From IMG/VR virus record IMGVR_UViG_3300026521_000471, positions 1 to 64,000 of that record: a stretch of 64,000 nt of DNA; one strand, given 5' to 3'. Made by a program: the position numbers and the translations under genes. The stretch's first letter is position 1; every line of letters starts with the position of its first letter. Shown piece after piece: positions 5,242 through 43,682 of this stretch. The notes beneath the pieces were generated by a model that was not told the origin of the DNA, made no database searches, and saw only the letters and a program-made list of their open reading frames with translations.

Positions 5242-5250
5242 AAGGTAAGT

Positions 5251-12120: not shown

Positions 12121-12130
12121 GGGTTAAAAA

Positions 12131-12460: not shown

Positions 12461-12690
12461 ACAATTTAAATAAAGGTGATATAATTGAATTTCAAATGTC
12501 CTTTGGAAAACTCCACGGTGTTATAGAAGTTAAAACAGAAGATTTAATACATGTTCGTAGTTTTTCTTTGGATAAAACTGCACATCGATGGTTTATGTTT
12601 TATCAAGAAACTTTTAAACATGTAAAAAATAATTATGGGGCTCAACTTGAAGACGACTTCATTACATCAAATCCTGAGAGGTTTATATGA
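12448..12690 (+). CDS. small protein with PE-tail (NPERFI); start moved from 12358 to ATG 12448
   Basis: GAAGAG upstream of 12448; avoids a long overlap. Confidence 0.65.
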   Translation: MYDLNNLNKGDIIEFQMSFGKLHGVIEVKTEDLIHVRSFSLDKTAHRWFMFYQETFKHVKNNYGAQLEDDFITSNPERFI

Positions 12691-12938
12691 AGAATATATA
12701 TGAAATAGCCAATGAATGTTATCCTATGTTATTAGTACACCCTGCAACAAACTGGGAACAGGAAATTCATAATTATAGAGCTCTAATTATCATAGAGATT
12801 TCAAAGCATTACCCTGATATTCTTGATAACTGTGAAGATTGCGTTAAAGTTATTCAAAATTCTGATGTACTAGAATATAAATTTAGTGATAAATTTATAA
12901 AACGGATTTTAGAAAAGTATCCTGAAGCATTAATATGA
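12687..12938 (+). CDS. small protein with PE-tail (YPEALI)
   Basis: Terminal motif; ATGA overlap. Confidence 0.7.
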   Translation: MKNIYEIANECYPMLLVHPATNWEQEIHNYRALIIIEISKHYPDILDNCEDCVKVIQNSDVLEYKFSDKFIKRILEKYPEALI

Positions 12939-13246
12939 AGTGTTCTGAAGAAGAAGCGATCGCTGTTAATTTTTTTAGAAAATTACCACCGGAAGTAAAG
13001 GTTGAAATTGATGAATATTTTTTACCTGAATTATCTGATGATACAAAAAATGCCCTTTTAAAAAATATTACTTTAATTGGTGAAGTTTTTAAAATGACAC
13101 CTAATTTAGCAGAATATTATACAAAATACGCTCAAGATTGTGATTACTTTCGATTGTTAGGATTTTGGGAAGAAATTAGTACTGTACTTGTAACTATATT
13201 TAATTCAACTGATTACTATGAAAGATACCCAGAATATTTGGTTTAA
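12935..13246 (+). CDS. small protein with PE-tail (YPEYLV)
   Basis: Terminal motif; ATGA overlap. Confidence 0.7.
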   Translation: MKCSEEEAIAVNFFRKLPPEVKVEIDEYFLPELSDDTKNALLKNITLIGEVFKMTPNLAEYYTKYAQDCDYFRLLGFWEEISTVLVTIFNSTDYYERYPEYLV

Positions 13247-13249
13247 ATG

Positions 13250-13257
13250 TATAAATA
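13250..13257 (+). promoter_or_regulatory. T4-like late promoter TATAAATA
   Basis: Exact T4 gp55 consensus 25 nt before 13283; chance matches are common in AT-rich DNA. Confidence 0.55.
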
Positions 13258-13282
13258 AATAAAAAATGAAAAGGTTAATAAT

Positions 13283-13657
13283 ATGAAATTAAATGATATT
13301 CTCTTTGAAAAAGAATTATCGGATTTAGCAAAAGAATTTGATCATGCCAAACAAGAATTAAAAAAAGATACAAATATAAGAATTACATTGGATGAAGTTA
13401 AACAATTTGTTAGAAAGTGGAAAAATTTTACTGATAAATTTGATATTACAAAAAAACGTATCTCTGTTATTAAAAAAACTGGGGATAAATTACTAAAATA
13501 TCTAAATTATAGAATTGATAAAATGGAAGAAGTAAAAACTATTGATAAAAGTGAGATTGAACCTCTTAGAAGTTATTTAGATGAATTAAAATTTGATATA
13601 GATTCACACATTGAAATACAACAAATAAAATATGATTCAACAGCTAGGAGAGTATAA
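13283..13657 (+). CDS. putative late helical protein, MKLNDILFE leader
   Basis: Late-type promoter, RBS, leader. Confidence 0.7.
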   Translation: MKLNDILFEKELSDLAKEFDHAKQELKKDTNIRITLDEVKQFVRKWKNFTDKFDITKKRISVIKKTGDKLLKYLNYRIDKMEEVKTIDKSEIEPLRSYLDELKFDIDSHIEIQQIKYDSTARRV

Positions 13658-14182
13658 ATGCAATTAGAAGATTTAAATAACGAATTACTATTAGAAAAAA
13701 CTTTTTATAAAATCAATAAAACCCTTAGTAAACATTTAGATAAACTGGAAGATGATGCGAGAGAAGTAAATTTGAATGTAGTTAATCTTTTAGTTAAAAA
13801 AGCAGAAAAGTTTTTGGATGATTTGGATGAAAAACTTAAAGATAAAAATGCTCCTATTCTTGAGTTAGACGACCTTATGGCAAAATATAAGAAACCTTTA
13901 CTTTTTTTCAAAAAACGTTTTGAAGATTTAGTTGATCAATATAGCGACAATGCATTTCAACGAGAAATAATGACTGAGGTTAGAATAATACTTACTAATT
14001 TAATAAATAGAATCGATTCAAGCCTAACTGGATTTGAAGGTGAAATTAAAAGAAAAATTAAAGCTACGGCACAAGAAGTATCTTCAGAAGTTACACAAAA
14101 AGGAAAAGGTATTAGAGTTCCACACGGTCTGGCACAGGATTTACATTCAAAAAAACATTATATTCATAAAGAGAAAAAATAA
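13658..14182 (+). CDS. putative late helical protein, MQLEDLNNELLLE leader
   Basis: AGGAG RBS; similar leader and composition to 13283. Confidence 0.7.
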   Translation: MQLEDLNNELLLEKTFYKINKTLSKHLDKLEDDAREVNLNVVNLLVKKAEKFLDDLDEKLKDKNAPILELDDLMAKYKKPLLFFKKRFEDLVDQYSDNAFQREIMTEVRIILTNLINRIDSSLTGFEGEIKRKIKATAQEVSSEVTQKGKGIRVPHGLAQDLHSKKHYIHKEKK

Positions 14183-14227
14183 TTTTTATTGTAAAATAAT
14201 TATAAAAGAATTAAGGGATTGAATTAA

Positions 14228-14611
14228 ATGACTCGTTATAATCTTGAGCTTGATAAAAAGCAATTAGAACTCATTATGAAATCGCTAGATTTTTATTCAA
14301 GAATACAAATGGGTCAAGTTTCAGAATTAGTTAATCCATTTGTACTACCTTTACCAGACGCTAATTATGATGATGTTGAAGAATTAATAATCGAATTAAA
14401 AAAAGCTATGTTTCCAAACTTAGATACCAATTCATACTATGCTATAAAATCAAATCATATACCTGATTCTACTCGTCAAATGATTGATATTATGGAAGTT
14501 ATACGATATAATTTAAATGATAAAAATGGTGATCGACCATATCAATGGTCAAATGAATTAGACGCCCCATCAATTACAAAAATAGGAGAAGATAATGAAA
14601 CTGCATCATAA
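14228..14611 (+). CDS. hypothetical phage protein
   Basis: ORF with RBS after TGTAAAAT at 14190. Confidence 0.65.
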   Translation: MTRYNLELDKKQLELIMKSLDFYSRIQMGQVSELVNPFVLPLPDANYDDVEELIIELKKAMFPNLDTNSYYAIKSNHIPDSTRQMIDIMEVIRYNLNDKNGDRPYQWSNELDAPSITKIGEDNETAS

Positions 14612-15035
14612 AACATTAGCAAAAATTGAGAAACTTTTTAGTATAAGTTTATCATATACCGAGACACAAGAAGAACAGTATAACACATACCCCGATATGA
14701 TGTTTATTATAGAATCTTATGTCGATTTTGTTTCATCATTAAAATTTAGATTGAAAAACAAAGAAGATTATACTCAGGAAAATTACCATGATGAAATCTA
14801 TGAATATGATTCAATGATTAGTGCATGGAGAGAACATTTAGTTTATCAATTGCCAGATGAAAATAATGAAAATCATAATGATTTATACTCTGTTTTATTC
14901 TCAACTTTACAAGCTGTTGACTCTTTAATTGATGATGATCATTTTTATTGGGAAGAAGATGAATCTAATGAAATAGATCTTCAAGATACTGACGAATCTT
15001 CTTCTGAAGAATTTGAGTTAGATAGAACATTCTAA
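14595..15035 (+). CDS. hypothetical acidic protein
   Basis: AGGAG RBS. Confidence 0.65.
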   Translation: MKLHHKTLAKIEKLFSISLSYTETQEEQYNTYPDMMFIIESYVDFVSSLKFRLKNKEDYTQENYHDEIYEYDSMISAWREHLVYQLPDENNENHNDLYSVLFSTLQAVDSLIDDDHFYWEEDESNEIDLQDTDESSSEEFELDRTF

Positions 15036-15041
15036 CTCAAA

Positions 15042-16229
15042 TTATTTCTTTCTCAGTTTATTTTTTAATTCTTCTATTTGCTTAATTTTTTTCTCAGTAA
15101 TATCTTGTTTGATTGAAATATAACCAATCTTTACCCCATCTTTATCATAATATGGTGAAATCACATTATTTGACCAATAAGCACCACCATTTTTCTTTTT
15201 AGATTTAATTTCTCCTACCCAGTTTTTATCCGCTTCAATAGTTTCCCATAATTTCTTAAAAACATTTGCATTCATATCCGGATGTCTTATAATATTATGT
15301 GGTTCGCCTAATAATTCTGTTTTTGAATAGCCTGTTGTTTTACAAAAAGCTGATGATACATCTACAATTACTCCAAATAAATTCGTCTTGGTAAATATGA
15401 CATGTTTTTCAAAATCAGAATGCATACTAGTTAGTTGTGTATTAAGAATATCATTTTGTGTCATTAAGTCCGAAAAATCTTTGCTGTATTCATCGGCGAT
15501 TTTTTCATTTTCAAAATCAGCCCTTTCTTTTATTTTAATCATTGAATATATATAAATTATTCCAGAAATAAGCATGATCATAGAGACAATGAATAAAACA
15601 AATAACTGTAAATGTTTAATATTATCATTAATATCATTTATTGGTATCGTAGCTTCAGTAACCCCTCTAGCATCCCCTATTTTCCATTTAAAATCCCAAG
15701 TCTTTAACGGGTGGTGATTATGGCATTGGACACAAGATTTATTAGTCATATATTCGGTTTTCGCATACGTTAGATAATCTGTCCCGTCCTTTTCCGTTCT
15801 TAAAAATAGTTCCTTATGACCCTTTATATTTTTTAAGACCTTCAGCTGTAATTTTGTCAGAACTCTATCAGATTGATTTTTAAATGGAAAATTACTATAA
15901 ACAGATATACGTAAATTTGGATCGTCTATCATTGAAGCTACATCATGCATAAATGTTGCAGGATACGGTATTGTATTATTATCTTTATGTTCTGTACTAA
16001 ATTTTATACCATTAATATTATATATATCATCAACTACGTATTTGGCATAGTATTCTTTCGTTTTTAAAAGTAGATTTACTACTGATTTAGTTTTATCTTC
16101 TGCTAAATCAACTGCATATTCATGCATTTTATATGGAATAAAGACGTAAAGTGATATTAATGTAACAATATAAGATATAGTCACTCCAATTAAAAATTTA
16201 TTAGAAAACATTTGTAAAATATTTTTCAT
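15042..16229 (-). CDS. membrane sensor: periplasmic c-type heme domain (DUF3365/Tll0287-like) plus cytoplasmic PAS, no output domain
   Basis: TM helix, IPYPATF, YSNFPFKN, CVQCH (CxxCH), WKIGDARG, TM helix, PAS (HNIIRHPDM...LWETI...WVGEIKS); start at ATG 16229 after GAGGGA. Confidence 0.85.
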   Translation of the reverse strand: MKNILQMFSNKFLIGVTISYIVTLISLYVFIPYKMHEYAVDLAEDKTKSVVNLLLKTKEYYAKYVVDDIYNINGIKFSTEHKDNNTIPYPATFMHDVASMIDDPNLRISVYSNFPFKNQSDRVLTKLQLKVLKNIKGHKELFLRTEKDGTDYLTYAKTEYMTNKSCVQCHNHHPLKTWDFKWKIGDARGVTEATIPINDINDNIKHLQLFVLFIVSMIMLISGIIYIYSMIKIKERADFENEKIADEYSKDFSDLMTQNDILNTQLTSMHSDFEKHVIFTKTNLFGVIVDVSSAFCKTTGYSKTELLGEPHNIIRHPDMNANVFKKLWETIEADKNWVGEIKSKKKNGGAYWSNNVISPYYDKDGVKIGYISIKQDITEKKIKQIEELKNKLRKK

Positions 16230-16293
16230 AAGTCCCTCAGTTTGTTGATTTATCAACTTATTTATTTTCGGATTTACTTTCTTTAATTTATGA

Positions 16294-16315
16294 TTAAGGT
16301 CTAATATAATATAAT
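16294..16315 (+). promoter_or_regulatory. class I promoter TTAAG-N11-TATAAT
   Basis: Motif match upstream of 16338. Confidence 0.65.
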
Positions 16316-16337
16316 ATAAAAAATTAAAAAAGGATAT

Positions 16338-16736
16338 ATGATGCATATACGTAGTTTAGATTATTTTGATAAAGTGGGTCTGGTAACAAGCGGACTCTCT
16401 ATTTTTATTTCAAGTATTTTTTTACTTATGAGTTTTAGTTATTTAACAGAGAATTATTTAGTTATTTTAGGGTTGGTAAGTATTTCTTTAGTCCTAAATA
16501 ATTACTACCTTACCATAACTACACCAGAAATATTTAAAAAGATTAATGATGATCCCTGGAAATTTATTTTAGAACAAAGACCTATACTCGGACCTATTGC
16601 CGTTTTATTAAGTTTTTTATTAATAGGGACATTAATTAGTGGTAATCTTTTTGCATGGCAAATATATATTATATATTTTATTATGCTTATGCTTATGAAT
16701 CATACCTATTCAAAAAAATATAAACTTAGAGATTAG
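16338..16736 (+). CDS. membrane protein (about 4 TM)
   Basis: Hydrophobic segments. Confidence 0.7.
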   Translation: MMHIRSLDYFDKVGLVTSGLSIFISSIFLLMSFSYLTENYLVILGLVSISLVLNNYYLTITTPEIFKKINDDPWKFILEQRPILGPIAVLLSFLLIGTLISGNLFAWQIYIIYFIMLMLMNHTYSKKYKLRD

Positions 16737-24353: not shown

Positions 24354-24584
24354 ATGGATCTAATAGAAAAAATGATAGAAGCAGCAAAAGATTCAAATTC
24401 AATCGATGCAATTGCTATTGAAGATGATCTTCTTAGAATGGATGTTGAAAAAGCTAAGGGTATTCTTTTAGAATTTAAACAAAACCATAACATTAAGTTA
24501 TATTATGAATTCGCTAAATTATTACCTAAAAAAGATATTTTTAAAAAAATCTTGGCACACGAGAAAAAACAGGCTCACAAATGA
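24354..24584 (+). CDS. hypothetical protein
   Basis: ORF after promoter. Confidence 0.6.
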   Translation: MDLIEKMIEAAKDSNSIDAIAIEDDLLRMDVEKAKGILLEFKQNHNIKLYYEFAKLLPKKDIFKKILAHEKKQAHK

Positions 24585-24931
24585 AAGTAGCAATTATTAA
24601 ATCGACTAATGAAGCAATGCATAACTTAATAGTTGATACTCTTAATGATATAAATGATAATATTGAAATTATTGAAATAGATGAGACAAACCTAGATATT
24701 ATCGCTGATGGTGTTTTAGCTACATCAGTAAGAGATATTGAAATGTTAGATCAAATGATGACTCATAATGATTACGGTATGCTTATAACGGGGGGCAAAA
24801 TAGTCAACGGTGTAGTACCCAGTACACAGCAACACGTTTTAAAATATAGTAAAAAAATTTTATGGCGTGATAAAATACATTTTAAAAAAGTACTTAATGA
24901 AATGTATAAAGTTTTAAAAGGAAAGAGATGA
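24581..24931 (+). CDS. hypothetical protein
   Basis: ATGA overlap. Confidence 0.6.
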   Translation: MKVAIIKSTNEAMHNLIVDTLNDINDNIEIIEIDETNLDIIADGVLATSVRDIEMLDQMMTHNDYGMLITGGKIVNGVVPSTQQHVLKYSKKILWRDKIHFKKVLNEMYKVLKGKR

Positions 24932-26436
24932 AATTTACTTATCAGGGAAAACAATACACACTTATTTTATTTACTTTAGCAGGTTCAAGATTCTATGGAA
25001 CGCATTTCAATGGAAAAGGTACTGATAGAGAACATCCACTAAAACCTGATTATGTATCCGATAGTGACTATCGCGGAATCTTTGTCGCCGACGTAGATAC
25101 AAAAATCGGTTTAATGGGAACTATCGAACAAATCGAAGTTAAAAAAGGTAAAAATGGTATCGTTCCAAAAGAGCAACAAGAACTGATTAAAGAGTTAAAT
25201 GAAAAACTTGGTTTAGATATGCCGATGGATGAGGATATTACTCTTTATGAAACAAGAAAATTTGTAAGTATGGCTATTGAGAATAACCCAAACATCCTTG
25301 ATTTACTTTTTGCTGATGATGAAGCTATCATTTATTCTAATAAAAGAGGTAGAAAACTTCTTAAAAATAAAGATATTTTTCTAAGTAAAAAAACAAAACA
25401 TACTTTTTCAGGCTATGCAGCGAGCCAGTTAGGACGTATCCGTGGACATTACAAAATGCTTACAAAATACCCAAAAGTAAATACTGTAATTAGACAATTA
25501 AAACAAGCTTTTGAAGATAAAGTTATTGATTTTAATTGGATTACAGATCACTTCGGTGGTAACGTTTCACAATTCGTAACGGGCATGACACAAGAAGAAG
25601 CTTCAGAATTAGGTAAAATTCCATCAATTTCTTGGGAAGATTTTATCAAAGATAGAGAAGCAGATTTCTCAACTTTCTCTGATGGTGCAAAGTATATGGA
25701 TTATTCTGATGAAGAATATGAAGAAATGAAGAACTCTGTCATGTTTAAGGGTGAGTGGAATCTTTATAGAAAACCTCAAGCAATCGATTACTGTACTGCT
25801 AAAGATTTGAAAGCTCATAAACTTGATATGAATGATGGTGTATGGAGTTTAGATGGGGAAAGAGTAGTTACAAAGGAAGATGGTGAAATTATGACTATTA
25901 GAGAATTTCTTTTAACTGAAGCATCTTTTAGAACTATCTCTAAAACTCAATTTAATATCTTTACACCACCTGAAGGAAAATACAACGGTGGTATCTTTGC
26001 TAGAAATGGTAAACTTCGTTCAAATGATCCTAAAGAAGTTGGTGAATTTGTATTCCAACTTAGTTTCAATGAAAATGAATTTAAAAAACAAACGGATGCT
26101 ATAGCAAAACTTTGGGAGTGGCGTGTTAAAAGAAATGAAAAAAGAAGTATTTTAGAGGAAGCTTTCGGTTATGATACTAAACACGCAGCACATCTTGTAA
26201 GATTACTATTAGGTGCTAAAAATATCCTTGAAAAAGGTACTTATGAACCTCGGTTGAAAGGTAAAAACCTTAAATTAGTTAGAGATGTTTTAGCGGGAAA
26301 ATACACTTATAATGAAGTGGTAAAAATGGGAGAAGAATTAGAGAAAGAATTAGAACCTCTCTATGAAGCTTCTACTTTACCATTTAGTGCTGATAAAGTA
26401 AAAGCAAATGAGCTGCTACTAAAGCTTAGTAAGTGA
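24928..26436 (+). CDS. YcgL/RlaP-like nucleotidyltransferase with a large internal insertion
   Basis: AGSRFYG...SDSDYRGIF, NNPNILDLLF, TFSGYAASQL, GYDTKHAAHLVRLL. Confidence 0.85.
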   Translation: MKFTYQGKQYTLILFTLAGSRFYGTHFNGKGTDREHPLKPDYVSDSDYRGIFVADVDTKIGLMGTIEQIEVKKGKNGIVPKEQQELIKELNEKLGLDMPMDEDITLYETRKFVSMAIENNPNILDLLFADDEAIIYSNKRGRKLLKNKDIFLSKKTKHTFSGYAASQLGRIRGHYKMLTKYPKVNTVIRQLKQAFEDKVIDFNWITDHFGGNVSQFVTGMTQEEASELGKIPSISWEDFIKDREADFSTFSDGAKYMDYSDEEYEEMKNSVMFKGEWNLYRKPQAIDYCTAKDLKAHKLDMNDGVWSLDGERVVTKEDGEIMTIREFLLTEASFRTISKTQFNIFTPPEGKYNGGIFARNGKLRSNDPKEVGEFVFQLSFNENEFKKQTDAIAKLWEWRVKRNEKRSILEEAFGYDTKHAAHLVRLLLGAKNILEKGTYEPRLKGKNLKLVRDVLAGKYTYNEVVKMGEELEKELEPLYEASTLPFSADKVKANELLLKLSK

Positions 26437-26443
26437 CTGAAAC

Positions 26444-26806
26444 ATGAAATTTATTAATTTTTATAATAATTTAGATTTACAAACTGGGCACAAACTTTCA
26501 TTCTTTGTTGAAATGATTTTAGTGCCCTCTATACTTTCTTTGGTTATCACATTTGGTTTTGATAGTATTTTCTTTCTTACGTCTATAATTGATAATTCAT
26601 GGACTATTTATATTGTAGCGTTGATAGTGAATTATATAATTGTAGTTGGATTATTTTTACTTTGTGCTATTGTTTATATTATTATATCTTCAGAAATATT
26701 AGATTTCAAATTATCGAAAACTAGTTTTTTAAACTTTAAACGCATGATTAAGAAAGCATCACAAGAAGAATTAATAGAATCTAAAGTAAATTTAACTCCA
26801 GAATGA
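26444..26806 (+). CDS. membrane protein
   Basis: Hydrophobic segments. Confidence 0.6.
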   Translation: MKFINFYNNLDLQTGHKLSFFVEMILVPSILSLVITFGFDSIFFLTSIIDNSWTIYIVALIVNYIIVVGLFLLCAIVYIIISSEILDFKLSKTSFLNFKRMIKKASQEELIESKVNLTPE

Positions 26807-26841
26807 AAATTGTTTAATAAATAAAAGAAAAAGGGTTAATT

Positions 26842-28137
26842 GTGGAAAATATTGATATAGGTATTATTGATGTAGAATCTTTAAAAACCTTAAATAAAAT
26901 TTTAGAATCAAAAAAAGAATATATTATAAATTATTGGCTAGATGATGAAAAACTCAAGCCAATTTTTGAGATGTTGGAAATAGAAAAAGAAACATTTAAA
27001 AGCAAATACGCATATCATATTTTTCATCATTTTCAATCCATTGATTATGATAATATGTATTTTAAAACATATATCGATGAAATGGAAGACAAACAGCATT
27101 TAATAAAATATTTTTACCGATTAATCGCTCATCTAAAGAATAAGATTATATTATTTTTAATACAGTATAACATAGATAACAATGATAAAATATTTATGGA
27201 TGATTCACTGCTATATACGATTGATAATGCTATATCTGAATTATTAGATTCTATAACAAAACATCTTCAAAGAGATTATACTGCAAATACAAAAAAATTA
27301 AAGATATTAGAAAATGCTGCATTAGTTACTAGAACTGATAAAGACGGTAGCATATTATTTATGAGCCCACCATTATTAGAGTTACTAGGATATTCAGAAG
27401 AGGAAATGCTTGGAGCAGGTTTTAATAAAATCAGACATCCCAGAGTTTCTTCTAAATTTTATGAAAAACTATGGAGGACATTAAAATCTGGTAAACCTTT
27501 CAAAGGGACTATTAAAAATTTAACTAAGAATAGAAAAGAAGTAATATTTCATACACAAATTGTTCCTGATTTTAATTTTGATGGAGAAATAGTTGGTTAT
27601 ACAGCTATAAAAACAGATTTAACCGATAAAACAAGAGCAAGAACTGACACATTAACAGGTCTTTTAAATCGTTCAGCATTTAATGATCGATTATCTGAAC
27701 TTATAGATAGATATAACAATTTTCATATTCCAGTTTCTTTAATAATGATTGATATTGATTATTTTAGTGAAGTAAATAATAACTACGGTCATATTACTGG
27801 TGATAAAACTCTAAAACATTTTGTTAAACTAATTAAAGAGATAATTAGACCTACTGATACATTTGCAAGATGGGGAGGGGAAGAATTTATTATAATTCAA
27901 AATAATACATTAGATAATTCTATTAAAACTGCTGAAAGAATAAGAAAACATATAGCAGAAAGCACGTTCCCAGAAGTAGGACAAAAAACATGTAGTCTAG
28001 GTGTGGCAGAATTTAATAATAGTTATGCAGATATAGATTCATTTATAAATGAACTTGATAAAGCATTATATTATTCAAAAGAACATGGACGTAATAAGGT
28101 CTCATACGTAGTTAAAAATGGTATAGAATCTGTTTAA
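26842..28137 (+). CDS. PAS-GGDEF diguanylate cyclase
   Basis: PAS (FNKIRHP...LWRTL), DTLTGLLNR, DIDYFSEVNNNYGHITGD, I-site RPTD, active site RWGGEEF. Confidence 0.93.
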   Translation: MENIDIGIIDVESLKTLNKILESKKEYIINYWLDDEKLKPIFEMLEIEKETFKSKYAYHIFHHFQSIDYDNMYFKTYIDEMEDKQHLIKYFYRLIAHLKNKIILFLIQYNIDNNDKIFMDDSLLYTIDNAISELLDSITKHLQRDYTANTKKLKILENAALVTRTDKDGSILFMSPPLLELLGYSEEEMLGAGFNKIRHPRVSSKFYEKLWRTLKSGKPFKGTIKNLTKNRKEVIFHTQIVPDFNFDGEIVGYTAIKTDLTDKTRARTDTLTGLLNRSAFNDRLSELIDRYNNFHIPVSLIMIDIDYFSEVNNNYGHITGDKTLKHFVKLIKEIIRPTDTFARWGGEEFIIIQNNTLDNSIKTAERIRKHIAESTFPEVGQKTCSLGVAEFNNSYADIDSFINELDKALYYSKEHGRNKVSYVVKNGIESV

Positions 28138-28166
28138 AATGTATAATTCATATAAAGGATTAATAC

Positions 28167-28868
28167 ATGGTTAAACACAATTTAGAATTAAAATATTTTC
28201 ATGGATGTAATAATTGTAGAGATTGCTGCAATGGTAAATTGTTTTCAATGGGAGATGTCACATACTCAGATTTCACTAATATAATAAAATTGTTTCCTAC
28301 TGCTTTTAATATAAAAACAAAAAAGATGGTATTTTTTTACTCTTTGTTTCCATTTTTAGGATGTCATTATTTTAGGGATGGAAATTGTACCATTTATGAA
28401 ACCATTGATAGACCTAATACCTGTATAAACTATCCATTCGGTATAGATTCAAATCATACTATTCAATATGATCCCATACATTGTCCAGAATTAAATGATA
28501 ATATCTCTAAAACCCCTACAATTATAAACAATGAAATAAATCCAGACATAATGAATAATTTTTTTACGGAAAAACAGTATTTATCAAACATTAATAACCA
28601 TGATAAAATATTAGATGATTTTACTAAAATGGTATTTGAAACAGAATCGCTTTTGGATTTTCCAACATTTAAAACTTTAGACGGAGATATTATTAATATA
28701 AATGAATTAGAGGCTAATAGAGATATGAAAATATTGGATACTGATAATTTTTTAAAAATACTTAAACGACAAAAATTAGAGATGTATAGTCGATTTGTAT
28801 ATGGTCATTTATTTTCACTAGATAACTTACCACAATTTGGCACTAGATTATTAGAACAACTTAAATAA
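28167..28868 (+). CDS. YkgJ/FliB-like cysteine-cluster (CxxCxxCC) protein
   Basis: CNNCRDCC...CHYF...CTIY...RPNTCINYPF. Confidence 0.85.
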   Translation: MVKHNLELKYFHGCNNCRDCCNGKLFSMGDVTYSDFTNIIKLFPTAFNIKTKKMVFFYSLFPFLGCHYFRDGNCTIYETIDRPNTCINYPFGIDSNHTIQYDPIHCPELNDNISKTPTIINNEINPDIMNNFFTEKQYLSNINNHDKILDDFTKMVFETESLLDFPTFKTLDGDIININELEANRDMKILDTDNFLKILKRQKLEMYSRFVYGHLFSLDNLPQFGTRLLEQLK

Positions 28869-28895
28869 TTATTAAGGTAGATTTATGTATTATGT

Positions 28896-29219
28896 TTGAA
28901 AAAGGTTAAATGCATGAATCAAATAAAAGATAGAATTCCGTCAGAAGTTGCTATGAGCAATTTTGTAATTATATATCATAAAGGTAGAAAAGTTTTTAGA
29001 ATATTTGATCAAAGTCGTAGAAGTAAATGGAATAAGGTTTTAAAATATTGTCAAAAATCATTAGAATATGCTGCATCTGATGAAATGATTACTAGAACTT
29101 TAAACGAATATGAAAAAAATCAAGCTTTATACGCTATATTTTATACAGATAATACTGATGAATTAGAAATACGTTCAATGGATGATATGTATAAACAGCA
29201 TCCAGAAATTTTCATCTAA
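28896..29219 (+). CDS. small protein with PE-tail (HPEIFI)
   Basis: Terminal motif; likely start ATG 28914. Confidence 0.7.
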   Translation: MKKVKCMNQIKDRIPSEVAMSNFVIIYHKGRKVFRIFDQSRRSKWNKVLKYCQKSLEYAASDEMITRTLNEYEKNQALYAIFYTDNTDELEIRSMDDMYKQHPEIFI

Positions 29220-29287
29220 AAAATGTAAAATTCTAAAAAACAGTTGTACTCTGAATAGAGACACTATCAAAATTTAAGGTCATTATT

Positions 29288-30892
29288 ATGGCAAAATATG
29301 AAATAGATTTAAATGGTAATCCATTTAGTGAATTCGCTCAAGGTGAGGAAAAGATTAGAGTTACAAAATTACTTACAAATAATTGGCATACCGAACAGGA
29401 TGTCTTTAGAATATCTAAAGTCAAAAATTCAAAGCCTAAACATTCAGTTGATATTACAGAAGTAAATTTTAAAAAAATATATAAAGCATCAAAAGATCTA
29501 CCAAACTATACCTTTGAGATTGGTGGTGCTATAGAATCAGTTGAAGGCCCATTTATCATTGTTGACATTTATGATAATAGTTTACTTTATACTGTTGGAT
29601 TAGGTCGAACAGCTCCAATTAGATTAGGTTATAAACTTGATGAAGGTGAGAAATATATACATAAAGATAAGTTTGAGCTTGCTCTTCATAATAAGTTAAA
29701 GGGACGTGATTGGATTATTTGGGAAAATGGTGATTTCTTCCTATTATTTCACTTTGAAGACAAAGTATATAAGAAAATAAAATTTGATAGGAATTTTAAT
29801 CCTGCAAGTTTTTACCCTAGTTCACCTATTGTAGGAAATCCCGAGTACATTGTTAAACCGTATCAAATAGATAAAGCGATATTTATAGAGGATGTCACTT
29901 ATAATGATTCTCCTCAAGCATTAGATTCAGAAGAACGAGATTTGAATAATCCATATCAATCATATAATATTCCATTTAATAGTGAAGATCCTAGATTTGC
30001 AATACTAAATCAATATATTTTTAATAAATATCCAAATGATTTTGTTTCTAGTCAATGGTCAACATCATCATGGGCGGATAAATTTAATAAAGAAATGGAT
30101 AGAGAAATTGGATGGTTTAATTCTAAATATGACTTAATACAACCATTAAAAGAGTTTAACTACTCGCCTTTTAGAATTAGTATCATTTCATTCGATAATA
30201 TAGAAATGTACGTTAGTTTATTTGAAAAAAAAGCCGATGAAATATGGACTTGTTGTAATAAAACATTAGAGGAATTTATTTATCCTGGTAAATATAAACA
30301 TGAAAAGCAATTTTTACATATTTCTATAAAAGATAGAAAATCATCAGATGAATATAAAGAATATATCAATCCATCACCTTTAAAAGAAGGATACCTTAAA
30401 CTTAAAAATTCTCCATCTAGTAATTTTGAGTTGGTAAAAGATAGAATCAAGCCGATACATGAATTTGATGAGCCCATGATTTATTGCCTATACAGGGAAT
30501 TAAAAGACGATGAAGTTGAAGATAGATTGGCTTTAGATTTCAAACCACGATTTAAACAAAATGATAAGGTTGAGTTAAAAGAATCTCAATGGGAGGATAT
30601 AACTGATCATATAGAAACTATTGATAATTCTAAACTTACATTAGATGAGCAATATAAAATTATGGAAGATATTATCAAAGACGATTCATTGTTACAAAAT
30701 GCGGAATTGAAAATAGAAAACAATAAACTCATGCTAAATAAGAATTTATCATACCGAAATAGAATTTATTATATTACAAAAGTAGTATTTCGTGATGGGT
30801 ATTTCCTTTATTATGGTTATACACCTCAAAATATAAAAGATGATAAATATTTTTATGTTTCTGATATTGAAGTTAAATGTAAAATAGATTAA
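29288..30892 (+). CDS. hypothetical protein
   Basis: 534-aa ORF; TGTAAAAT at 29224. Confidence 0.75.
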   Translation: MAKYEIDLNGNPFSEFAQGEEKIRVTKLLTNNWHTEQDVFRISKVKNSKPKHSVDITEVNFKKIYKASKDLPNYTFEIGGAIESVEGPFIIVDIYDNSLLYTVGLGRTAPIRLGYKLDEGEKYIHKDKFELALHNKLKGRDWIIWENGDFFLLFHFEDKVYKKIKFDRNFNPASFYPSSPIVGNPEYIVKPYQIDKAIFIEDVTYNDSPQALDSEERDLNNPYQSYNIPFNSEDPRFAILNQYIFNKYPNDFVSSQWSTSSWADKFNKEMDREIGWFNSKYDLIQPLKEFNYSPFRISIISFDNIEMYVSLFEKKADEIWTCCNKTLEEFIYPGKYKHEKQFLHISIKDRKSSDEYKEYINPSPLKEGYLKLKNSPSSNFELVKDRIKPIHEFDEPMIYCLYRELKDDEVEDRLALDFKPRFKQNDKVELKESQWEDITDHIETIDNSKLTLDEQYKIMEDIIKDDSLLQNAELKIENNKLMLNKNLSYRNRIYYITKVVFRDGYFLYYGYTPQNIKDDKYFYVSDIEVKCKID

Positions 30893-30897
30893 AATAT

Positions 30898-30921
30898 AAA
30901 TACCCTTAAAAGAGGGTATTT
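30898..30921 (+). terminator. hairpin, possible terminator
   Basis: AAATACCCT-taaaag-AGGGTATTT directly after the 29288 ORF. Confidence 0.45.
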
Positions 30922-31207
30922 ATGGATTTTTTTATTTTCATTTTATATAGTCTAGCAGCTTATAATGTTTTTCTTATAGCTCCGCTTTTTTTTTAAAATC
31001 CTTTCTATTCTTGGATTTGTCTATATAAATTATTTGATATGGTGAGATAGATGTATGAAGTTATAGCAATATCAAAAGATAATCATAAGTACAGAGTAAT
31101 ACTAAATTGTAATATTAAAGATATTCCATCAGTATTCAAAGATTTTATTATTGATAAAGGGTGGGATCATTATGAATATAAAATACATTCTATTAATGAG
31201 ATAACCG

Positions 31208-31555
31208 ATGACTAGAATTGATAATAATTCATTCAAAGAAGCATTGGATAATATTTTAAATAAAAGTAGGATAGCTGTAATATTATCTGGTAGATTAAAC
31301 TGTATAAACTGCCAATTAACAAAAGCTAATATCCTAAATTATTTAAAAAAAAATCCAAAGACAAATATAGATTTTTTATATTTAAATGGTAGCATAGATG
31401 ATATTTTAGAGTCCTCTTATTATCAAATGGAAGAGCTTAATGAATACCCTAAAACTGCTATATTTTCAAGTTCAAATAATCCAACTTTTAAAGAAGGTAT
31501 TATTACAGAAGAAGATTTGTCTAAGATTGAACAATTAAAGAAAAACTGTTTATAA
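31208..31555 (+). CDS. thioredoxin-fold protein
   Basis: CINC near the N-terminus, EYPKT cis-Pro region. Confidence 0.6.
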   Translation: MTRIDNNSFKEALDNILNKSRIAVILSGRLNCINCQLTKANILNYLKKNPKTNIDFLYLNGSIDDILESSYYQMEELNEYPKTAIFSSSNNPTFKEGIITEEDLSKIEQLKKNCL

Positions 31556-39469: not shown

Positions 39470-39654
39470 TTGTAGATGTAGATAAAAAGGCAATCCAACA
39501 ACAAATAAAGTTTTTAGTTAAAATAATAAACCAATATCAAAAAAGATTAGAAACTGAACCTCAATTTTTAACTAGAGAAGTTGAAGAAAATTTAGAAAGA
39601 GCTAAAGCAAAATATGATTATATTATTAAAGAATATCCAGACTTAATCATCTAG
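39466..39654 (+). CDS. small protein with PE-tail (YPDLII)
   Basis: Terminal motif; ATGA overlap. Confidence 0.7.
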   Translation: MIVDVDKKAIQQQIKFLVKIINQYQKRLETEPQFLTREVEENLERAKAKYDYIIKEYPDLII

Positions 39655-41301
39655 ACTATTTTTTAAATCTAATATATTACCGAATGATTTTTTATGAGTT
39701 ATTTGAGCAAAAATATTTTTCATATCATTACCTGAAAGATGACCTCGTTCTGCTTCTCTCATTAAATTTTTTGTTATTTTAAACTCGCCATTATATTTAA
39801 ATAATTCAAATGCTAAATTTATAATATGACCTTGTATTTGTAACGTATTAGAAGCACTAGCATATCCAAATTCTCTGGCTACTGCAATAATTTTTTTCAT
39901 GTTTTGTGGCATATTCCAAATACTAAAAAGCTTCTCAACAGCGTGTAAATTATTAAATCCTAATAGATTCATTTCTAAACTAGTTATAGATTTTGACGAT
40001 TTTTGTAAATTTTTAAAACGATCTACTCTCTCATTAATAATTAAAGCCTGATTTGTCAGGAGCATACCTAGTGGTAATATATGCATAACAGCAGTTAAAT
40101 CATCTTTATCATCTTGGGGTATATCTATAAATTTAATCCATTCTGAAACAAATTTAACTCGGTATTTTGAAACTTCAATTAACTCTTCTAATGAAATATC
40201 ATATGCGTCTAAATATAAACTGTCAAATGTTTCGTTAGCTACCTCTGTTATTGCTAATGCCCCTATTTGTTTTTTACCTAGTAATGATACAGCAATAGAG
40301 ATTTTTGATACTCGATTTGGTAGGCCTATATACGGGGAATTAATTTCCCGTAAAATAATTGCTGAGAACATTGGATCTTGTTCAACAACTTTTACTATTT
40401 GGTTGATATTTGAATTGCTATCAAAACACAATTCTTTTAACTTAGTTAATGTACTAGGTAAAGGTTCAATTGCTTCAGCTAGTTCAACTAATGTAATCTG
40501 CCCTTTATTAATAGGTATTTCAATCTCCGTATTACTACGTTCATATTTTTTAACAATCATAGTCTTAAAATCAGCCATTTTCATATTATGTGTATTATAA
40601 ACATTTTCGATTGCTAATTTTTCTTTAACTAAGTTTAAAGAACTTTCTTTACTGAATTTACTCAAAACATATAAATTTTCAAAATCGAATTCAATATCAT
40701 TTAAACAAACTATGAGATCTATGATATGCCCATCGGGGTATTTTAAATCAGTTATTAAAATTTTTTTACCGGGCATTTTTATAAGGTCAATTGCCTCGGA
40801 TTTAGTAGAAACACTATCCACAAATTTAAATTTTGTACTAAGAATTTCTGTTAATAATTTTGATACTTTTGGATCTCGATTAAGGATCACAATATCATAA
40901 TATTCATTAAGTTTTGGGGAAGTGTAATTTTTACATTGAACGATTGGCGCAGTATCAAATTCAATAGCATAAAATTCTGGATCTTCATGTTGTTGAATTT
41001 GAGTTACCCACCTTTCAATTTGAATAGAAAAGTTTTCAAACCAATTAATCACATCTTGATTAAAAGCACAAGTATAATTTTTTATAAAAAACAAAATATC
41101 TTCTGTTTTTTCAAGGAGAATAGAAATTTCTTCAAATTTATGATAGTAAGTAATAGCTTTTAATGAATGTATCGACCTAAATAATGTGTCGATCAATTTT
41201 GATGAATTAATTTCATCATTTCTAAAATCAATAATAGTGTTATTAATAATTATAGACAAATTATCTAATCTTATAATATAATCTTCAAGTTCTTCAGTCA
41301 T
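39643..41301 (-). CDS. Hpt + receiver-like + HDOD signalling protein
   Basis: CheA-P1-like LFRSIHSLKA; REC-like ILITDLKYPDG; HDOD PLPSTL...VEQDPMFSAIILREINSP...AVSLLG...WNMP. Confidence 0.85.
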   Translation of the reverse strand: MTEELEDYIIRLDNLSIIINNTIIDFRNDEINSSKLIDTLFRSIHSLKAITYYHKFEEISILLEKTEDILFFIKNYTCAFNQDVINWFENFSIQIERWVTQIQQHEDPEFYAIEFDTAPIVQCKNYTSPKLNEYYDIVILNRDPKVSKLLTEILSTKFKFVDSVSTKSEAIDLIKMPGKKILITDLKYPDGHIIDLIVCLNDIEFDFENLYVLSKFSKESSLNLVKEKLAIENVYNTHNMKMADFKTMIVKKYERSNTEIEIPINKGQITLVELAEAIEPLPSTLTKLKELCFDSNSNINQIVKVVEQDPMFSAIILREINSPYIGLPNRVSKISIAVSLLGKKQIGALAITEVANETFDSLYLDAYDISLEELIEVSKYRVKFVSEWIKFIDIPQDDKDDLTAVMHILPLGMLLTNQALIINERVDRFKNLQKSSKSITSLEMNLLGFNNLHAVEKLFSIWNMPQNMKKIIAVAREFGYASASNTLQIQGHIINLAFELFKYNGEFKITKNLMREAERGHLSGNDMKNIFAQITHKKSFGNILDLKNSLDD

Positions 41302-42109: not shown

Positions 42110-43682
42110 ATGGCAAAAGAGAAATTTGTTAGGGGTGAAAAACCTCATGTTAATGTGGGAACAGTAGGGCATAGACTATGTGCCATCTCTTGGTAACAAG
42201 GGATTAAAAAGAGTTTAAATTGTCTGGAAACCCCTAAAGCTTCTTTTACTAAAACAGAGCCAGAAATGGCATATGGTATAGTTAATGAAAATTAGAAAGA
42301 AAAAAGAAGATGGAATATGTGGAAACGCTAAGTTCTTTATAATGGGCAATCAGCAGCCAAGTTACCTAACTCAAATATATTGAGATTTCTATGTGAATAG
42401 AATTTAAGGTAGAAGGTTCAGAGACTGTAATAACTCAGTCCGTTAATCTTAATTGAATTTCGGATTATGGTACAGTCCAGACTACAACAACTTTACTTAG
42501 TTAGTTGGCTTATGAAAGTAAGTGTAGTAATTGGTAGATCATGGCAAGACTACTTTAACTGCAGCAATTACAGCAGTAATGGCAGTTAAAAACGGTGCAG
42601 CATTTATGGATTACGATCAAATCGATAATGCACCAGAAGAAAGAGAAAGAGGTATCACTATTGCTACTTCTCATGTTGAATATGAAACTGATAAAAGACA
42701 TTATGCTCATGTTGATTGTCCAGGTCACGCAGATTATGTTAAAAATATGATTACTGGTGCTGCACAAATGGATGGTGCTATTCTTGTTATTGCTGCTACT
42801 GATGGACCTATGGCTCAAACGAGAGAACATATCCTTCTTTCAAAACAAGTTGGTGTACCAGCAATTGTTGTTTTTATGAACAAAGAGGACCAACTTGATG
42901 ATGAAGATAAAGATGAAATGGCTGAACTTGTAGAAATGGAGATTAGAGAACTTCTTGACCAATACGGTTTTGATGGTGATAACACTCCTGTTATTCTTGG
43001 TAGTGCATTTCAAGCTCTTGAAGAAGCAAAAACCGGTACTTTAGGTGAGTGGTCAGAAAAGATTGTACAACTTATGGATTCAGTAGATGAGTGGATTCCA
43101 GAACCAGTTAGAGATACTGATAAGGATTTCTTAATGCCTATTGAAGATGTATTCTCAATTGCAGGTAGAGGTACAGTTGTTACTGGTAAAATTGAGAGAG
43201 GTACAATCAAACTTGGTGAAACAGTAGAAATTGTAGGTATTAAAGACACTCAAACATCAACTGTTACAGGAATTGAGATGTTCCGTAAAGAGATGGAAGA
43301 AGGTTTAGCTGGGGATAATGCAGGTATTCTTCTAAGAGGAATTTCAAAAGATGATGTTGAAAGAGGTCAAGTTCTTTGTAAACCTGGTTCAATAACACCA
43401 CATACAAAGTTCAAAGCGGAAGTTTATGTTCTAAGTAAAGATGAGGGTGGTCGTCATACTCCATTCTTTAATAATTATAGACCTCAGTTCTATTTCTATA
43501 CATCTGATATTACTGGTGCAATTACACTAGAAGAAGGTGTTGAAATGGCTATGCCTGGTGATAATGTGACTATTACGGTAGAACTTATTGCTCCAATGGC
43601 TATCGAAAAAGGAACAACTTTTGCTATTAGAGAAGGTGGTAGAACTGTCGGCTCTGGTATGATTGGAGAAATTATCGAGTAA
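42110..43682 (+). CDS. tuf: elongation factor Tu, two exons: join(42110..42172,42534..43682), 403 aa
   Basis: Exon 1 [21 protein letters not shown] plus exon 2 VDHGKTT; [30 protein letters not shown]. Confidence 0.97.
42173..42533 (+). ncRNA. group I intron (361 nt, no ORF) in the tuf P-loop
   Basis: P1 GGCAU/GUGCC with U.G at the splice site; P10 CUAU/GUAG; GGGCAATCAGCAGCCAAG; GTTCAGAGACTG and ACAGTCC (P7); terminal G; removal restores GHVDHGKT. Confidence 0.95.

What the first reader, a model, noticed from the sequence alone, without database searches (positions are those of the whole stretch)
26816..28868. Intact PAS-GGDEF diguanylate cyclase in a phage, next to a YkgJ/FliB-like protein
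Seen: GGEEF, the upstream metal-binding Asp and the RxxD I-site are all present; AATAAATA lies upstream; the next gene is a CxxCxxCC cluster protein. Established: c-di-GMP generally lowers motility and promotes attachment. Inference: with the FlgM-like, Hpt-HDOD and heme-PAS genes, the phage may carry a dispersed toolkit that reprograms host motility and sessility.
Basis: partly seen in the sequence, partly recalled or inferred. Interest (0 to 1): 0.68.

Follow-up and report, generated by a model that had tools for sequence, protein, structure and literature searches.

The report
Sensor diguanylate cyclase in jumbo phage
A 224-kb uncultured phage, probably of Arcobacter-like bacteria, carries a real and conserved but fast-evolving sensor enzyme gene for the bacterial "settle down" signal c-di-GMP, one of several host-type signalling genes in its genome; phage genes of this kind have been seen before and none has been tested.

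Summary
The ORF is real. Window 26842-28137 (+, GTG start) encodes 431 aa with three domains, not two: a sensor-globin-like helical domain, a PAS domain and a GGDEF domain (Pfam E 5.5e-40). GGEEF, the metal-binding Asp, both guanine-binding residues, the C-terminal Lys/Arg and an RxxD I-site are present. One catalytic-centre residue is not: the Lys matching PleD K332 is Ser, here and in the closest phage relative only.

It is not misassembled host DNA. The gene sits in the same place in a second ~221-kb contig and in a similar neighbourhood on a more distant 25-kb contig. The four phage proteins form one clade, weakly placed beside Arcobacteraceae proteins.

It evolves about ten times faster at the protein level than its neighbours (dN/dS 0.36 against 0.02-0.05).

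The CxxCxxCC neighbour is a conserved backbone gene. In related contigs an HDOD gene or other ORFs fill the slot before it, so the adjacency carries no functional meaning. No FliB or FlgM signal was found.

The genome also encodes three more GGDEF proteins (one with an intact-looking EAL domain), an HDOD protein, a Tll0287-PAS sensor and a chemoreceptor.

Best reading: a signal-gated, product-inhibited c-di-GMP synthase used during infection. Activity and expression are untested. Viral GGDEF genes are already reported.

The parts
26842..28137 (+). Gene for the 431-aa sensor diguanylate cyclase (GTG start, stop included)
   Evidence: ORF. Pfam PAS + GGDEF. 63% identical syntenic homologue in L005.
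26830..26835 (+). AAAGGG, a Shine-Dalgarno-like word 6 nt before the GTG start
   Evidence: Read from the sequence. Inference only.
26842..27321 (+). Residues 1-160: helical sensor-globin-like input domain, probably without haem
   Evidence: AF2 model with pLDDT ~70. VIA-align hits: RsbR N-domain 2bnl Z 12.9, rmsd 2.6 over 122 aa; DosC globin 4zva Z 12.9. No conserved His in alignment A7. Fastest-evolving part, dN/dS 0.53.
27322..27627 (+). Residues 161-262: PAS domain (PAS_3/PAS_9 type)
   Evidence: Pfam E 2.3e-12. pLDDT ~90. The whole model matches PAS-GGDEF structures 5xgb and 8c05.
27628..28134 (+). Residues 263-431: GGDEF catalytic domain
   Evidence: Pfam E 5.5e-40. PDB 3ign E 2e-28. Model against 3ign: rmsd 1.4 A over 163 aa.
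27751..27753 (+). D304, the metal-binding Asp (PleD D327)
   Evidence: Invariant in 135 of 135 homologues.
27766..27768 (+). S309, at the position of PleD K332: the one catalytic-centre deviation
   Evidence: Lys in 129 of 135 homologues; Ser only in this phage and P0002. Role of K332 from PMC12943098.
27847..27858 (+). RPTD (res 336-339), the RxxD allosteric I-site
   Evidence: Five residues before GGEEF. The nearest Arcobacteraceae-type relatives have K in place of the R.
27874..27888 (+). GGEEF (res 345-349), the active-site signature
   Evidence: Invariant in alignments A4 and A5.
28167..28868 (+). 233-aa CxxCxxCC (YkgJ-type) Cys-cluster protein. A backbone gene of this phage group, not a partner of the cyclase
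   Evidence: PF03692 at 24.4 bits. 25 homologue clusters at 52-64% identity. Eight invariant Cys. Found without the cyclase in L147, L149 and a 149.8-kb contig. 95% identical in L005.
26444..26806 (+). 120-aa predicted membrane ORF between RlaP and the cyclase. Absent from the close relative, so it marks the slot as variable
   Evidence: ORF. No Pfam hit. L005 has only 55 bp between RlaP and the cyclase. No tblastn match in L005.
24928..26436 (+). RlaP-family nucleotidyltransferase, the conserved left border of the variable slot
   Evidence: Pfam E 5.6e-11. 94.8% identical in L005. The same border is seen in L147 and L149.
30895..30924 (+). First terminator-like hairpin downstream. The cyclase probably lies in a long co-directional transcription unit
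   Evidence: Only terminator-like site in 24500-31500. Consensus match only.

Best explanation
The gene encodes a three-domain sensor diguanylate cyclase: a sensor-globin-like domain, a PAS domain and a GGDEF domain. A lineage of large phages captured it long ago from a Campylobacterota host, most likely of the family Arcobacteraceae, and has kept it since.

Proposed mechanism, in steps:
1. The protein is made in the infected cell as part of a long co-directional transcription unit.
2. It dimerises through its helical and PAS input domains.
3. When those domains sense a still unknown intracellular cue, the two GGDEF domains are brought together and condense two GTP into c-di-GMP.
4. The product binds the RxxD I-site and caps output.
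5. The phage-made c-di-GMP feeds into the host's very large c-di-GMP network.

Together with the phage's own EAL phosphodiesterase, HDOD protein and chemoreceptor, this would let the phage, rather than the cell, set the behaviour of the infected cell (motility against attachment, surface structures).

Shown: domain architecture; catalytic and I-site residues; conservation and synteny among phage contigs; rapid protein evolution. Inferred: enzymatic activity, dimerisation, the signal, expression, and every downstream effect.
For: Domains and fold: Pfam PAS + GGDEF; PDB cyclases at E 1e-28; model against 3ign at rmsd 1.4 A; globin-like N-domain.

Catalytic set: D304, N312, D321, GGEEF and K413/R417 are invariant in A4/A5 or in 135/135 homologues. 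D321 (PleD D344) argues for GTP rather than ATP as substrate. RPTD is correctly spaced.

Phage-borne and retained:
- Near-identical protein on four contigs from different sources.
- Syntenic 63% homologue in a 221.5-kb contig.
- 38% homologue in a similar neighbourhood on a 25-kb contig.
- The four phage proteins form one clade (SH-aLRT 99), with a weak (81) sister relation to Arcobacteraceae-type proteins that share the N-domain.
- Synonymous divergence equals that of the neighbours (dS 0.63 against 0.49-0.86), so the gene was inherited with the genome. dN/dS is 0.24 in the GGDEF domain, which is still purifying selection.

Host link: phage EF-Tu is 76-82% identical to EF-Tu of 59 Arcobacteraceae genomes, against 69-71% in five other genomes tested. 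Those genomes hold up to 50 GGDEF matches.

Companion genes.
Against: - Ser replaces the Lys matching PleD K332, and Asn replaces D336. Both changes are unique to this phage and its closest relative among 135 homologues. Activity may be reduced or lost.
- The protein is under far weaker constraint than its neighbours (dN/dS 0.36 against 0.02-0.05).
- A Cys conserved in the relatives' N-domain lies in a stretch that is deleted here.
- The PAS-GGDEF linker is about 30 aa shorter than in the Arcobacteraceae relatives.
- No PilZ or other phage-borne receptor was found.
- The homodimer prediction gave no verdict.
- No capsid or terminase gene was found in the record.
Confidence: 0.55

Rival explanations
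1. The GGDEF domain is catalytically weakened or dead. It would then act as a c-di-GMP-binding module through its RxxD I-site (a receptor or sponge) or as a protein-binding scaffold, so the phage senses or soaks up host c-di-GMP rather than making it.
For: K332-equivalent is Ser and D336-equivalent is Asn, unique to this lineage. Constraint is relaxed. The I-site RxxD is complete in the phage clade, while the nearest bacterial relatives have KxxD. The phage carries three other GGDEF proteins that could do the synthesis.
Against: Every other catalytic residue, including GGEEF and both guanine-binding residues, is kept in both phages across dS ~0.6. Reviews describe the K332 contact with phosphate as a main-chain contact (PMC7288161), so loss of the side chain need not abolish activity.
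Confidence: 0.22
2. It is a decaying passenger gene in a variable cargo slot, with no role in infection.
For: It is the most divergent sizeable gene in the 24-kb comparison with L005 (63% against 75-98%). The slot between RlaP and CxxCxxCC holds different genes in related contigs. A sensor-domain segment is deleted.
Against: The frame is open and full-length in four phage lineages down to 38% identity. dN/dS is below 1 in every domain. The active-site motifs are retained.
Confidence: 0.12
3. The region is host DNA: a misassembly, or a chromosomal or plasmid element wrongly called viral.
For: No capsid, terminase, portal or sheath gene was recognised in 224 kb. Two Rep3-type initiator genes are present. 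Many host-like genes are present (EF-Tu, GroEL, DnaJ, GrpE, AspRS).
Against: A local misassembly is excluded: the gene order is the same in independent assemblies and GC is uniform at ~27%. Phage genes are spread through the record: rIIA, rIIB, endolysin, homing endonuclease, Acb1, PhoH, an array of ~22 tRNA genes. IMG/VR and CheckV call it viral, 85% complete. The best cellular homologues of the cyclase are only ~30-37% identical.
Confidence: 0.05
4. It makes a different cyclic dinucleotide (for example 3'3'-cGAMP, as Hypr GGDEF enzymes do) to interfere with defence signalling.
For: The phage also carries an Acb1-like anti-CBASS nuclease, so cyclic-nucleotide warfare is in its repertoire.
Against: As I recall the published Hypr work (not re-read here; PMC6456294 appeared in the list), the residue that sets specificity in Hypr enzymes is Ser in place of PleD D344. 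That position is Asp (D321) here and in all 135 homologues.
Confidence: 0.03

Closest known systems
Canonical I-site diguanylate cyclases (PleD, WspR, DgcZ; Pfam PF00990)
   Same: GGDEF fold, GGEEF signature, metal Asp, guanine-binding Asn and Asp, C-terminal Lys/Arg, and RxxD five residues upstream.
   Different: Ser at the PleD K332 position and Asn at D336. Input is globin-like + PAS rather than receiver or CZB domains. Encoded by a phage.
Globin-coupled diguanylate cyclases (E. coli DosC, Bordetella BpeGReg) and RsbR-type non-haem sensor globins
   Same: N-terminal sensor-globin fold ahead of a GGDEF output: DosC globin 4zva Z 12.9, BpeGReg 4uiq Z 11.9, RsbR 2bnl Z 12.9.
   Different: No conserved His to hold haem. 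A PAS domain stands between the globin-like domain and GGDEF, not a helical middle domain. The model has only moderate confidence (pLDDT ~70), and Z ~13 is near the tool's stated background for helical proteins.
Uncharacterised 455-461-aa Arcobacteraceae-type proteins (P0008, annotated 'diguanylate cyclase [Arcobacteraceae bacterium]'; P0010, P0017, P0021)
   Same: Same three-domain order over 95% of the length at 29-32% identity. Nearest group in the tree.
   Different: They have a ~30-aa longer PAS-GGDEF linker, KxxD in place of RxxD, the canonical Lys, and a conserved Cys in the N-domain that this phage lacks.
Previously reported virus-borne GGDEF genes (Mu-like phage of the Cariaco Basin, PMC7785012; phage G 'probable DgcQ', PMC12484599; at least 51 IMG/VR contigs)
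   Same: A GGDEF gene on a viral genome, read as signalling cargo. One of the IMG/VR contigs is a terminal-repeat-complete 300.9-kb phage with a PAS-GGDEF gene.
   Different: These are only 29-41% identical and not the same lineage. None was assayed in the papers I read. Here the gene is one of four GGDEF genes, alongside EAL, HDOD and chemoreceptor genes.
Phage peptide YIP, which acts on the host cyclase YfiN in Pseudomonas aeruginosa (PMC8085984, PMC11461919)
   Same: A phage acting on host c-di-GMP. It is the only experimentally shown case I found.
   Different: YIP is a small peptide that binds a host enzyme. Here the phage carries the enzyme itself.
YkgJ / CxxCxxCC Cys-cluster proteins (PF03692), for the neighbouring gene
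   Same: CxxCxxCC plus a second Cys group, eight invariant Cys.
   Different: Extra conserved ~120-aa C-terminal part with no family match. No match to any NCBIfam model, so none to a FliB flagellin methylase model.

Membership tests
GGDEF diguanylate cyclase (PF00990) | Domain profile match over the full domain | tested here: met
   137 bits against a cut-off of 23.8, profile positions 2-161 of 161. TIGR00254 at 139.8 bits.
GGDEF diguanylate cyclase (PF00990) | GG(D/E)EF signature and metal-binding Asp (PleD D327, E370) | tested here: met
   GGEEF 345-349 and D304.
GGDEF diguanylate cyclase (PF00990) | Guanine-binding Asn and Asp (PleD N335, D344) and phosphate-binding Lys/Arg (K442, R446) | tested here: met
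   N312, D321, K413 and R417 are invariant in A4/A5. N312 and D321 are also conserved in 135/135 homologues.
GGDEF diguanylate cyclase (PF00990) | Lys at the PleD K332 position (proposed transition-state stabiliser) | tested here: not met
   Ser309. Lys in 129 of 135 homologues. Role as given in PMC12943098. Reviews describe a main-chain contact, so the effect on activity is unknown.
GGDEF diguanylate cyclase (PF00990) | Makes c-di-GMP from GTP | not testable with these tools
   Needs an enzyme assay or a reporter.
I-site (product-inhibited) cyclases | RxxD exactly five residues before GG(D/E)EF | tested here: met
   R336-P-T-D339, then TFARW, then G345. The second-site Arg (PleD R390) is probably R366 in AERIR. 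That mapping rests on my recollection of the PleD sequence and was not tested.
PAS domain | Profile match and PAS fold | tested here: met
   PAS_3 at 47.5 bits against 25.6. Five-strand sheet with pLDDT ~90. Cofactor or ligand unknown.
Sensor globin (globin-coupled sensor / RsbR N-domain) | Globin fold | tested here: inconclusive
   The top 14 structural matches are almost all sensor or other globins, Z 10.6-12.9 over 122-144 aa. But pLDDT is ~70, there is no sequence-family hit, and Z ~13 is near the helical background.
Sensor globin (haem-binding type) | Conserved proximal His | tested here: not met
   No His column is conserved in A7. If it is a globin, it is probably a non-haem one.
Hypr GGDEF (cGAMP synthase) | Ser in place of PleD D344 (feature as I recall it from the Hypr literature; not re-read here) | tested here: not met
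   Asp321.
CxxCxxCC / YkgJ (PF03692), neighbour gene | Profile match and conserved Cys pattern | tested here: met
   24.4 bits against 23. C14, C17, C20, C21, C66, C74, C86 and C106 are invariant.
FliB flagellin lysine methylase, neighbour gene | Match to an NCBIfam model for the family | tested here: not met
   No NCBIfam family at E <= 0.01.
Tailed phage | Capsid, terminase, portal or tail genes | tested here: not met
   No Gp23, HK97 capsid, Terminase_6N/6C or sheath match. No structural PHROG among the 30 ORFs scanned one by one. The record is linear and rated 85% complete, so the module may lie off the contig.
Tailed phage | Other phage hallmark genes and viral classification | tested here: met
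   rIIA (E 1.5e-124), rIIB, endolysin, homing endonuclease, PhoH, Acb1, tRNA array. IMG/VR virus record.

The most novel reading that the evidence does not exclude
This phage lineage runs its own sensory c-di-GMP and chemotaxis layer inside the infected cell. The parts would be sensor-coupled synthesis (globin-like-PAS-GGDEF and other GGDEFs), breakdown (dCache-GGDEF-EAL), an HDOD module and a nitrate-type chemoreceptor. With these the infected cell would be steered by phage-chosen cues, for example towards or onto surfaces rich in new hosts. The sensor domains would evolve fast and be swapped in a cargo slot as hosts and niches change.
Probability: 0.2. Interest if true: 0.8.

Novelty: new member of a known kind. 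Interest (0 to 1): 0.5.

Why it matters
Phages are known to act on c-di-GMP indirectly, through a peptide that binds a host cyclase. Virus-borne GGDEF genes have been listed in metagenome studies, but in the papers I could search none has been assayed.

This locus is a well-defined candidate for such a test:
- The gene is full-length and phage-inherited.
- Its sensor architecture is interpretable.
- It has an I-site.
- It carries a natural change at a catalytic-centre residue.
- Close and distant phage homologues are available for comparison.
- The host family is identifiable and rich in c-di-GMP genes.

If the enzyme is active, this would show that large phages can write a bacterial second messenger themselves and gate it by their own sensors. 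The ten-fold faster protein evolution and the slot that alternates between cyclase and HDOD genes also make it a useful case of how signalling cargo turns over in phage genomes.

Tried and rejected
- AATAAATA as a promoter-like signal: 27 matches against 34.7 expected. Rejected.
- Sigma-70-like sites in 24.5-31.5 kb: 63 against 51.5 ± 7 expected. Uninformative in 27% GC DNA.
- Functional pairing of the cyclase with the CxxCxxCC gene: rejected, because the latter occurs without the cyclase in related contigs.
- FliB, FlgM, Hpt and PilZ: no family matches.
- Word search with the N-domain alone found only the protein itself. The protein-atlas feature search gave no usable hit.
- Homodimer prediction: no verdict, score 0.23 against a mark of 0.32. 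It counts neither for nor against dimerisation.
No read or expression evidence was obtained, and read laying was not used.
- Search for capsid, terminase and sheath genes and PHROG scans of 30 ORFs: no structural gene found.
- GenBank phages: no close relative of the cyclase, of rIIA (28%) or of the DUF2201 backbone gene (35%). Many 'phage' records that match GGDEF look like short unannotated or host-contaminated entries and were not used as evidence.
- The genome search could not reach the related metagenome contigs L005, L147, L149 and L006. The number of GGDEF genes in those relatives is therefore unknown.
- The large HMMER search was not run: the family assignment was already clear.
- No alternative genetic code was needed or used.
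Full report
**The observation**

The window is AT-rich (about 27% GC throughout). It forms the first 64 kb of a 224,467-bp linear IMG/VR virus record that CheckV rates 85% complete.

Between 26842 and 28137 on the + strand lies one ORF of 431 codons with a GTG start.
- AAAGGG stands six bases before the start.
- The start aligns with the N-terminus of the closest homologue.
- Pfam finds a PAS domain (res 161-262) and a full GGDEF domain (res 267-419, E 5.5e-40).

The finding's start coordinate, 26816, is only the word AATAAATA. That word is slightly rarer in the window than chance predicts (27 against 34.7), so it carries no information.

The next ORF, 28167-28868, matches the CxxCxxCC family just above its cut-off. 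All eight cysteines are invariant in ten homologues, so that assignment holds.

**Is the cyclase 'intact'?**

I aligned it with solved cyclases and with 134 homologues. The following are present:
- the metal Asp (D304);
- the guanine-binding Asn and Asp (N312, D321);
- GGEEF (345-349);
- the C-terminal Lys/Arg (K413, R417);
- an RxxD I-site (R336-D339) exactly five residues before GGEEF.

The AlphaFold model of the domain superposes on the Marinobacter cyclase 3ign at 1.4 A over 163 residues.

One catalytic-centre position departs. The Lys matching PleD K332 is Ser309, and the neighbouring D336 is Asn313.
- One paper lists K332 as the transition-state stabiliser (PMC12943098).
- A review describes its contact with phosphate as a main-chain contact (PMC7288161).
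- Among 135 sequences, only this phage and its closest relative show these two changes.

So the enzyme is nearly canonical but not fully. Whether the side chain matters for activity cannot be decided here. D321 is Asp; as I recall it, Hypr cGAMP-making GGDEFs have Ser there, so the expected product is c-di-GMP.

**A third domain**

Residues 1-160 match no sequence family, but they are shared with 455-461-aa Arcobacteraceae-type proteins.

Modelled alone (pLDDT ~70), this part gives a list of structural matches made up almost wholly of globins, with sensor globins at the top:
- RsbR N-domain, Z 12.9, rmsd 2.6 A over 122 residues;
- DosC globin, Z 12.9;
- pXO2-61, the Moorella stressosome sensor, and BpeGReg.

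The tool warns that helical models reach such Z values by fold commonness alone. I therefore call the domain sensor-globin-like, not a proven globin.

No His is conserved, so a haem-free, RsbR-like sensor is more likely. A Cys conserved in the bacterial and the more distant phage homologues lies in a segment that is deleted in this phage and its close relative.

**Phage gene or host DNA?**

- Proteins at least 90% identical to this one occur on four contigs from JGI, ENA and Logan assemblies.
- A 63% identical homologue lies on a 221.5-kb JGI contig with the same order of neighbours: RlaP, cyclase, 233-aa Cys protein, 101-aa and 534-aa ORFs, M16 peptidase, DUF2201.
- A 38% homologue lies on a 25-kb contig in a recognisably related neighbourhood: nucleotidyltransferase, cyclase, thioredoxin-like, M16, DUF2201, actin-like protein.
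- In a maximum-likelihood tree of the PAS-GGDEF part, the four phage proteins form one clade (SH-aLRT 99). That clade sits, with weak support (81), beside the Arcobacteraceae-type group that shares the N-domain.
- The best cellular matches are only 30-37% identical.

Local misassembly of host DNA is therefore excluded, and the capture is old.

The record as a whole carries rIIA, rIIB, endolysin, homing endonuclease, PhoH, an Acb1-like nuclease, RNA-repair genes, about 22 tRNA genes and a tmRNA.

I found no capsid, terminase or sheath gene. Both large contigs start at nearly the same point relative to the cyclase. The structural module therefore probably lies beyond a shared assembly break. That is inference.

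**Host**

The phage's EF-Tu gene (window 42531-43682) is 76-82% identical to EF-Tu of 59 sampled Arcobacteraceae genomes. It is 69-71% identical to EF-Tu of a Helicobacteraceae MAG, Thiomicrorhabdus, Flavobacterium and Bacillus.

Together with the GC content and the cyclase's nearest relatives, this points to Arcobacteraceae as source and probable host. Sampled genomes of that family hold up to 50 GGDEF matches each (24 of 26 have at least one). A phage-made signal would thus enter a very crowded network.

**Evolutionary behaviour**

I compared 38 ORFs between the window and the 221.5-kb relative. Neighbours are 75-98% identical at the protein level (RlaP 94.8, Cys protein 95.3, M16 94.9, DUF2201 98.1). 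The cyclase is only 63.4% identical.

| Gene or domain | dN | dN/dS |
|---|---|---|
| Cyclase, whole | 0.23 | 0.36 |
| Cyclase, globin-like domain | 0.35 | 0.53 |
| Cyclase, PAS | 0.23 | 0.30 |
| Cyclase, GGDEF | 0.13 | 0.24 |
| RlaP, Cys protein, M16, DUF2201 | 0.009-0.024 | 0.02-0.05 |

(Nei-Gojobori estimates.) Synonymous divergence is alike for all these genes: dS is 0.63 for the cyclase and 0.49-0.86 for the others. So the gene was not replaced from elsewhere. It has simply changed about ten times faster at the protein level, most of all in its sensor part. Purifying selection still acts on the catalytic domain.

**The neighbour and the slot**

The 233-aa Cys protein has 25 homologue clusters at 52-64% identity. 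The slot between RlaP and this gene varies among related contigs:
- In a 151-kb and a 68-kb contig it holds a 552-aa HDOD gene on the opposite strand.
- In a 149.8-kb contig it holds four other ORFs.
- In this phage the HDOD gene sits elsewhere (39646-41301), and an extra 120-aa membrane ORF precedes the cyclase.

The Cys protein is therefore a backbone gene, and the cyclase occupies a variable cargo slot beside it. The adjacency is no evidence of joint function. No NCBIfam model, FliB included, matches it.

**The 'toolkit'**

The genome has four GGDEF proteins:
- this one;
- a dCache-SGDEF-EAL protein of 725 aa, with all EAL motifs readable in the sequence;
- a 249-aa GGDEF without an I-site;
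- a truncated 192-aa GGDEF.

It also has the HDOD protein, a membrane Tll0287-like + PAS protein (window 15042-16346, - strand) and a NIT-MCPsignal-CZB chemoreceptor at 75.0-77.2 kb.

FlgM, Hpt and PilZ were not found. The only 'Hpt' trace is a weak match of the HDOD protein's N-terminus to the CheA P1 region.

Because an EAL enzyme is present, the net direction of c-di-GMP change cannot be assumed.

**Comparison with what is known**

- The IMG/VR scan, with only two peptide patterns, found 51 viral contigs with GGDEF relatives. One is a 300.9-kb genome complete with terminal repeats that carries one PAS-GGDEF gene.
- A Mu-like phage with a cyclase gene was described from the Cariaco Basin (PMC7785012).
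- Phage G has a 'probable DgcQ' (PMC12484599).
- The one experimentally shown case of phage action on c-di-GMP that I found is the YIP peptide, which acts on the host cyclase YfiN (PMC8085984, PMC11461919).
- I found no paper that assays a phage-encoded cyclase. The library does not hold all journals.

**Verdict**

This is a real, phage-inherited, nearly canonical sensor diguanylate cyclase. It is a new member of a kind already noticed in viral metagenomes. Four features are worth testing:
- the Ser at the K332 position;
- the globin-like-PAS input;
- the fast evolution of the protein;
- the cargo slot it shares with HDOD genes in relatives.

Activity, signal, expression and effect on the host are all untested.

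Noticed in passing
G000 75026-77212 (+), outside the window; L007:13026-15209: A 728-aa phage-borne chemoreceptor: NIT (nitrate/nitrite-type) sensor, MCP signalling domain and C-terminal CZB zinc-binding domain. It also matches phrog_8572.
   Followed up: partly
G000 151851-154028 (+) (L002:559-2736); 116056-116805 (+) (L003:1210-1959); L004:1369-1947 (-): Three further GGDEF proteins: a dCache-SGDEF-EAL protein with intact-looking EAL motifs, a 249-aa GGDEF without an I-site, and a truncated 192-aa GGDEF.
   Followed up: partly
window 39646-41301 (-): A 552-aa protein with a C-terminal HDOD domain (E 2e-20). Residues 19-107 weakly match the CheA P1/Hpt region. In related contigs this gene fills the slot that the cyclase occupies here.
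   Followed up: partly
window 15042-16346 (-): A 434-aa Tll0287-like + PAS protein with no recognisable output domain. It is 90% identical in the related contig.
   Followed up: no
window 42531-43682 (+): A phage-borne EF-Tu gene in a local GC peak (0.34). It is 76-82% identical to Arcobacteraceae EF-Tu. EF-Tu is also present in the related contig L149.
   Followed up: partly
window 437-949 (GrpE); DnaJ elsewhere in the window; GroEL at L010:5726-7348; Cpn10 in 142-224 kb: A full chaperone set (GrpE, DnaJ, GroEL, GroES) is encoded by the phage.
   Followed up: no
G000 ~67.7-83.8 kb (tRNAs); tmRNA at L013:11437-11818 (-); SmpB in 142-224 kb; AspRS at L008:14364-16211: Translation-related cargo: about 22 tRNA genes, a tmRNA with tag ANTKLYIPQTARVAA, SmpB and an aspartyl-tRNA synthetase.
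   Followed up: no
G000 58-142 kb (ORF not localised): An Acb1-like anti-CBASS nuclease (Pfam E 1e-33). The phage may therefore both degrade defence cyclic nucleotides and make c-di-GMP.
   Followed up: no
L008:17868-19418, L009:2580-3926, 3930-5516, 14040-15347, L010:10668-11996, 12012-13319: Six paralogues (436-529 aa) of the uncharacterised family phrog_10773 lie scattered over ~35 kb.
   Followed up: no
window (ORF not localised; family tally): A TnpB/IS605 OrfB-type gene (OrfB_IS605, Cas12f1-like TNB, HTH_OrfB_IS605) sits inside the phage genome.
   Followed up: no
G000 142-224 kb (ORFs not localised): Two Rep3-type plasmid-like initiator genes and a sigma-factor-like gene at L015:7675-8532. 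No capsid or terminase gene was recognised anywhere in the 224-kb record.
   Followed up: partly
window 26444-26806 (+): A 120-aa predicted membrane ORF just before the cyclase is absent from the 221.5-kb relative.
   Followed up: partly
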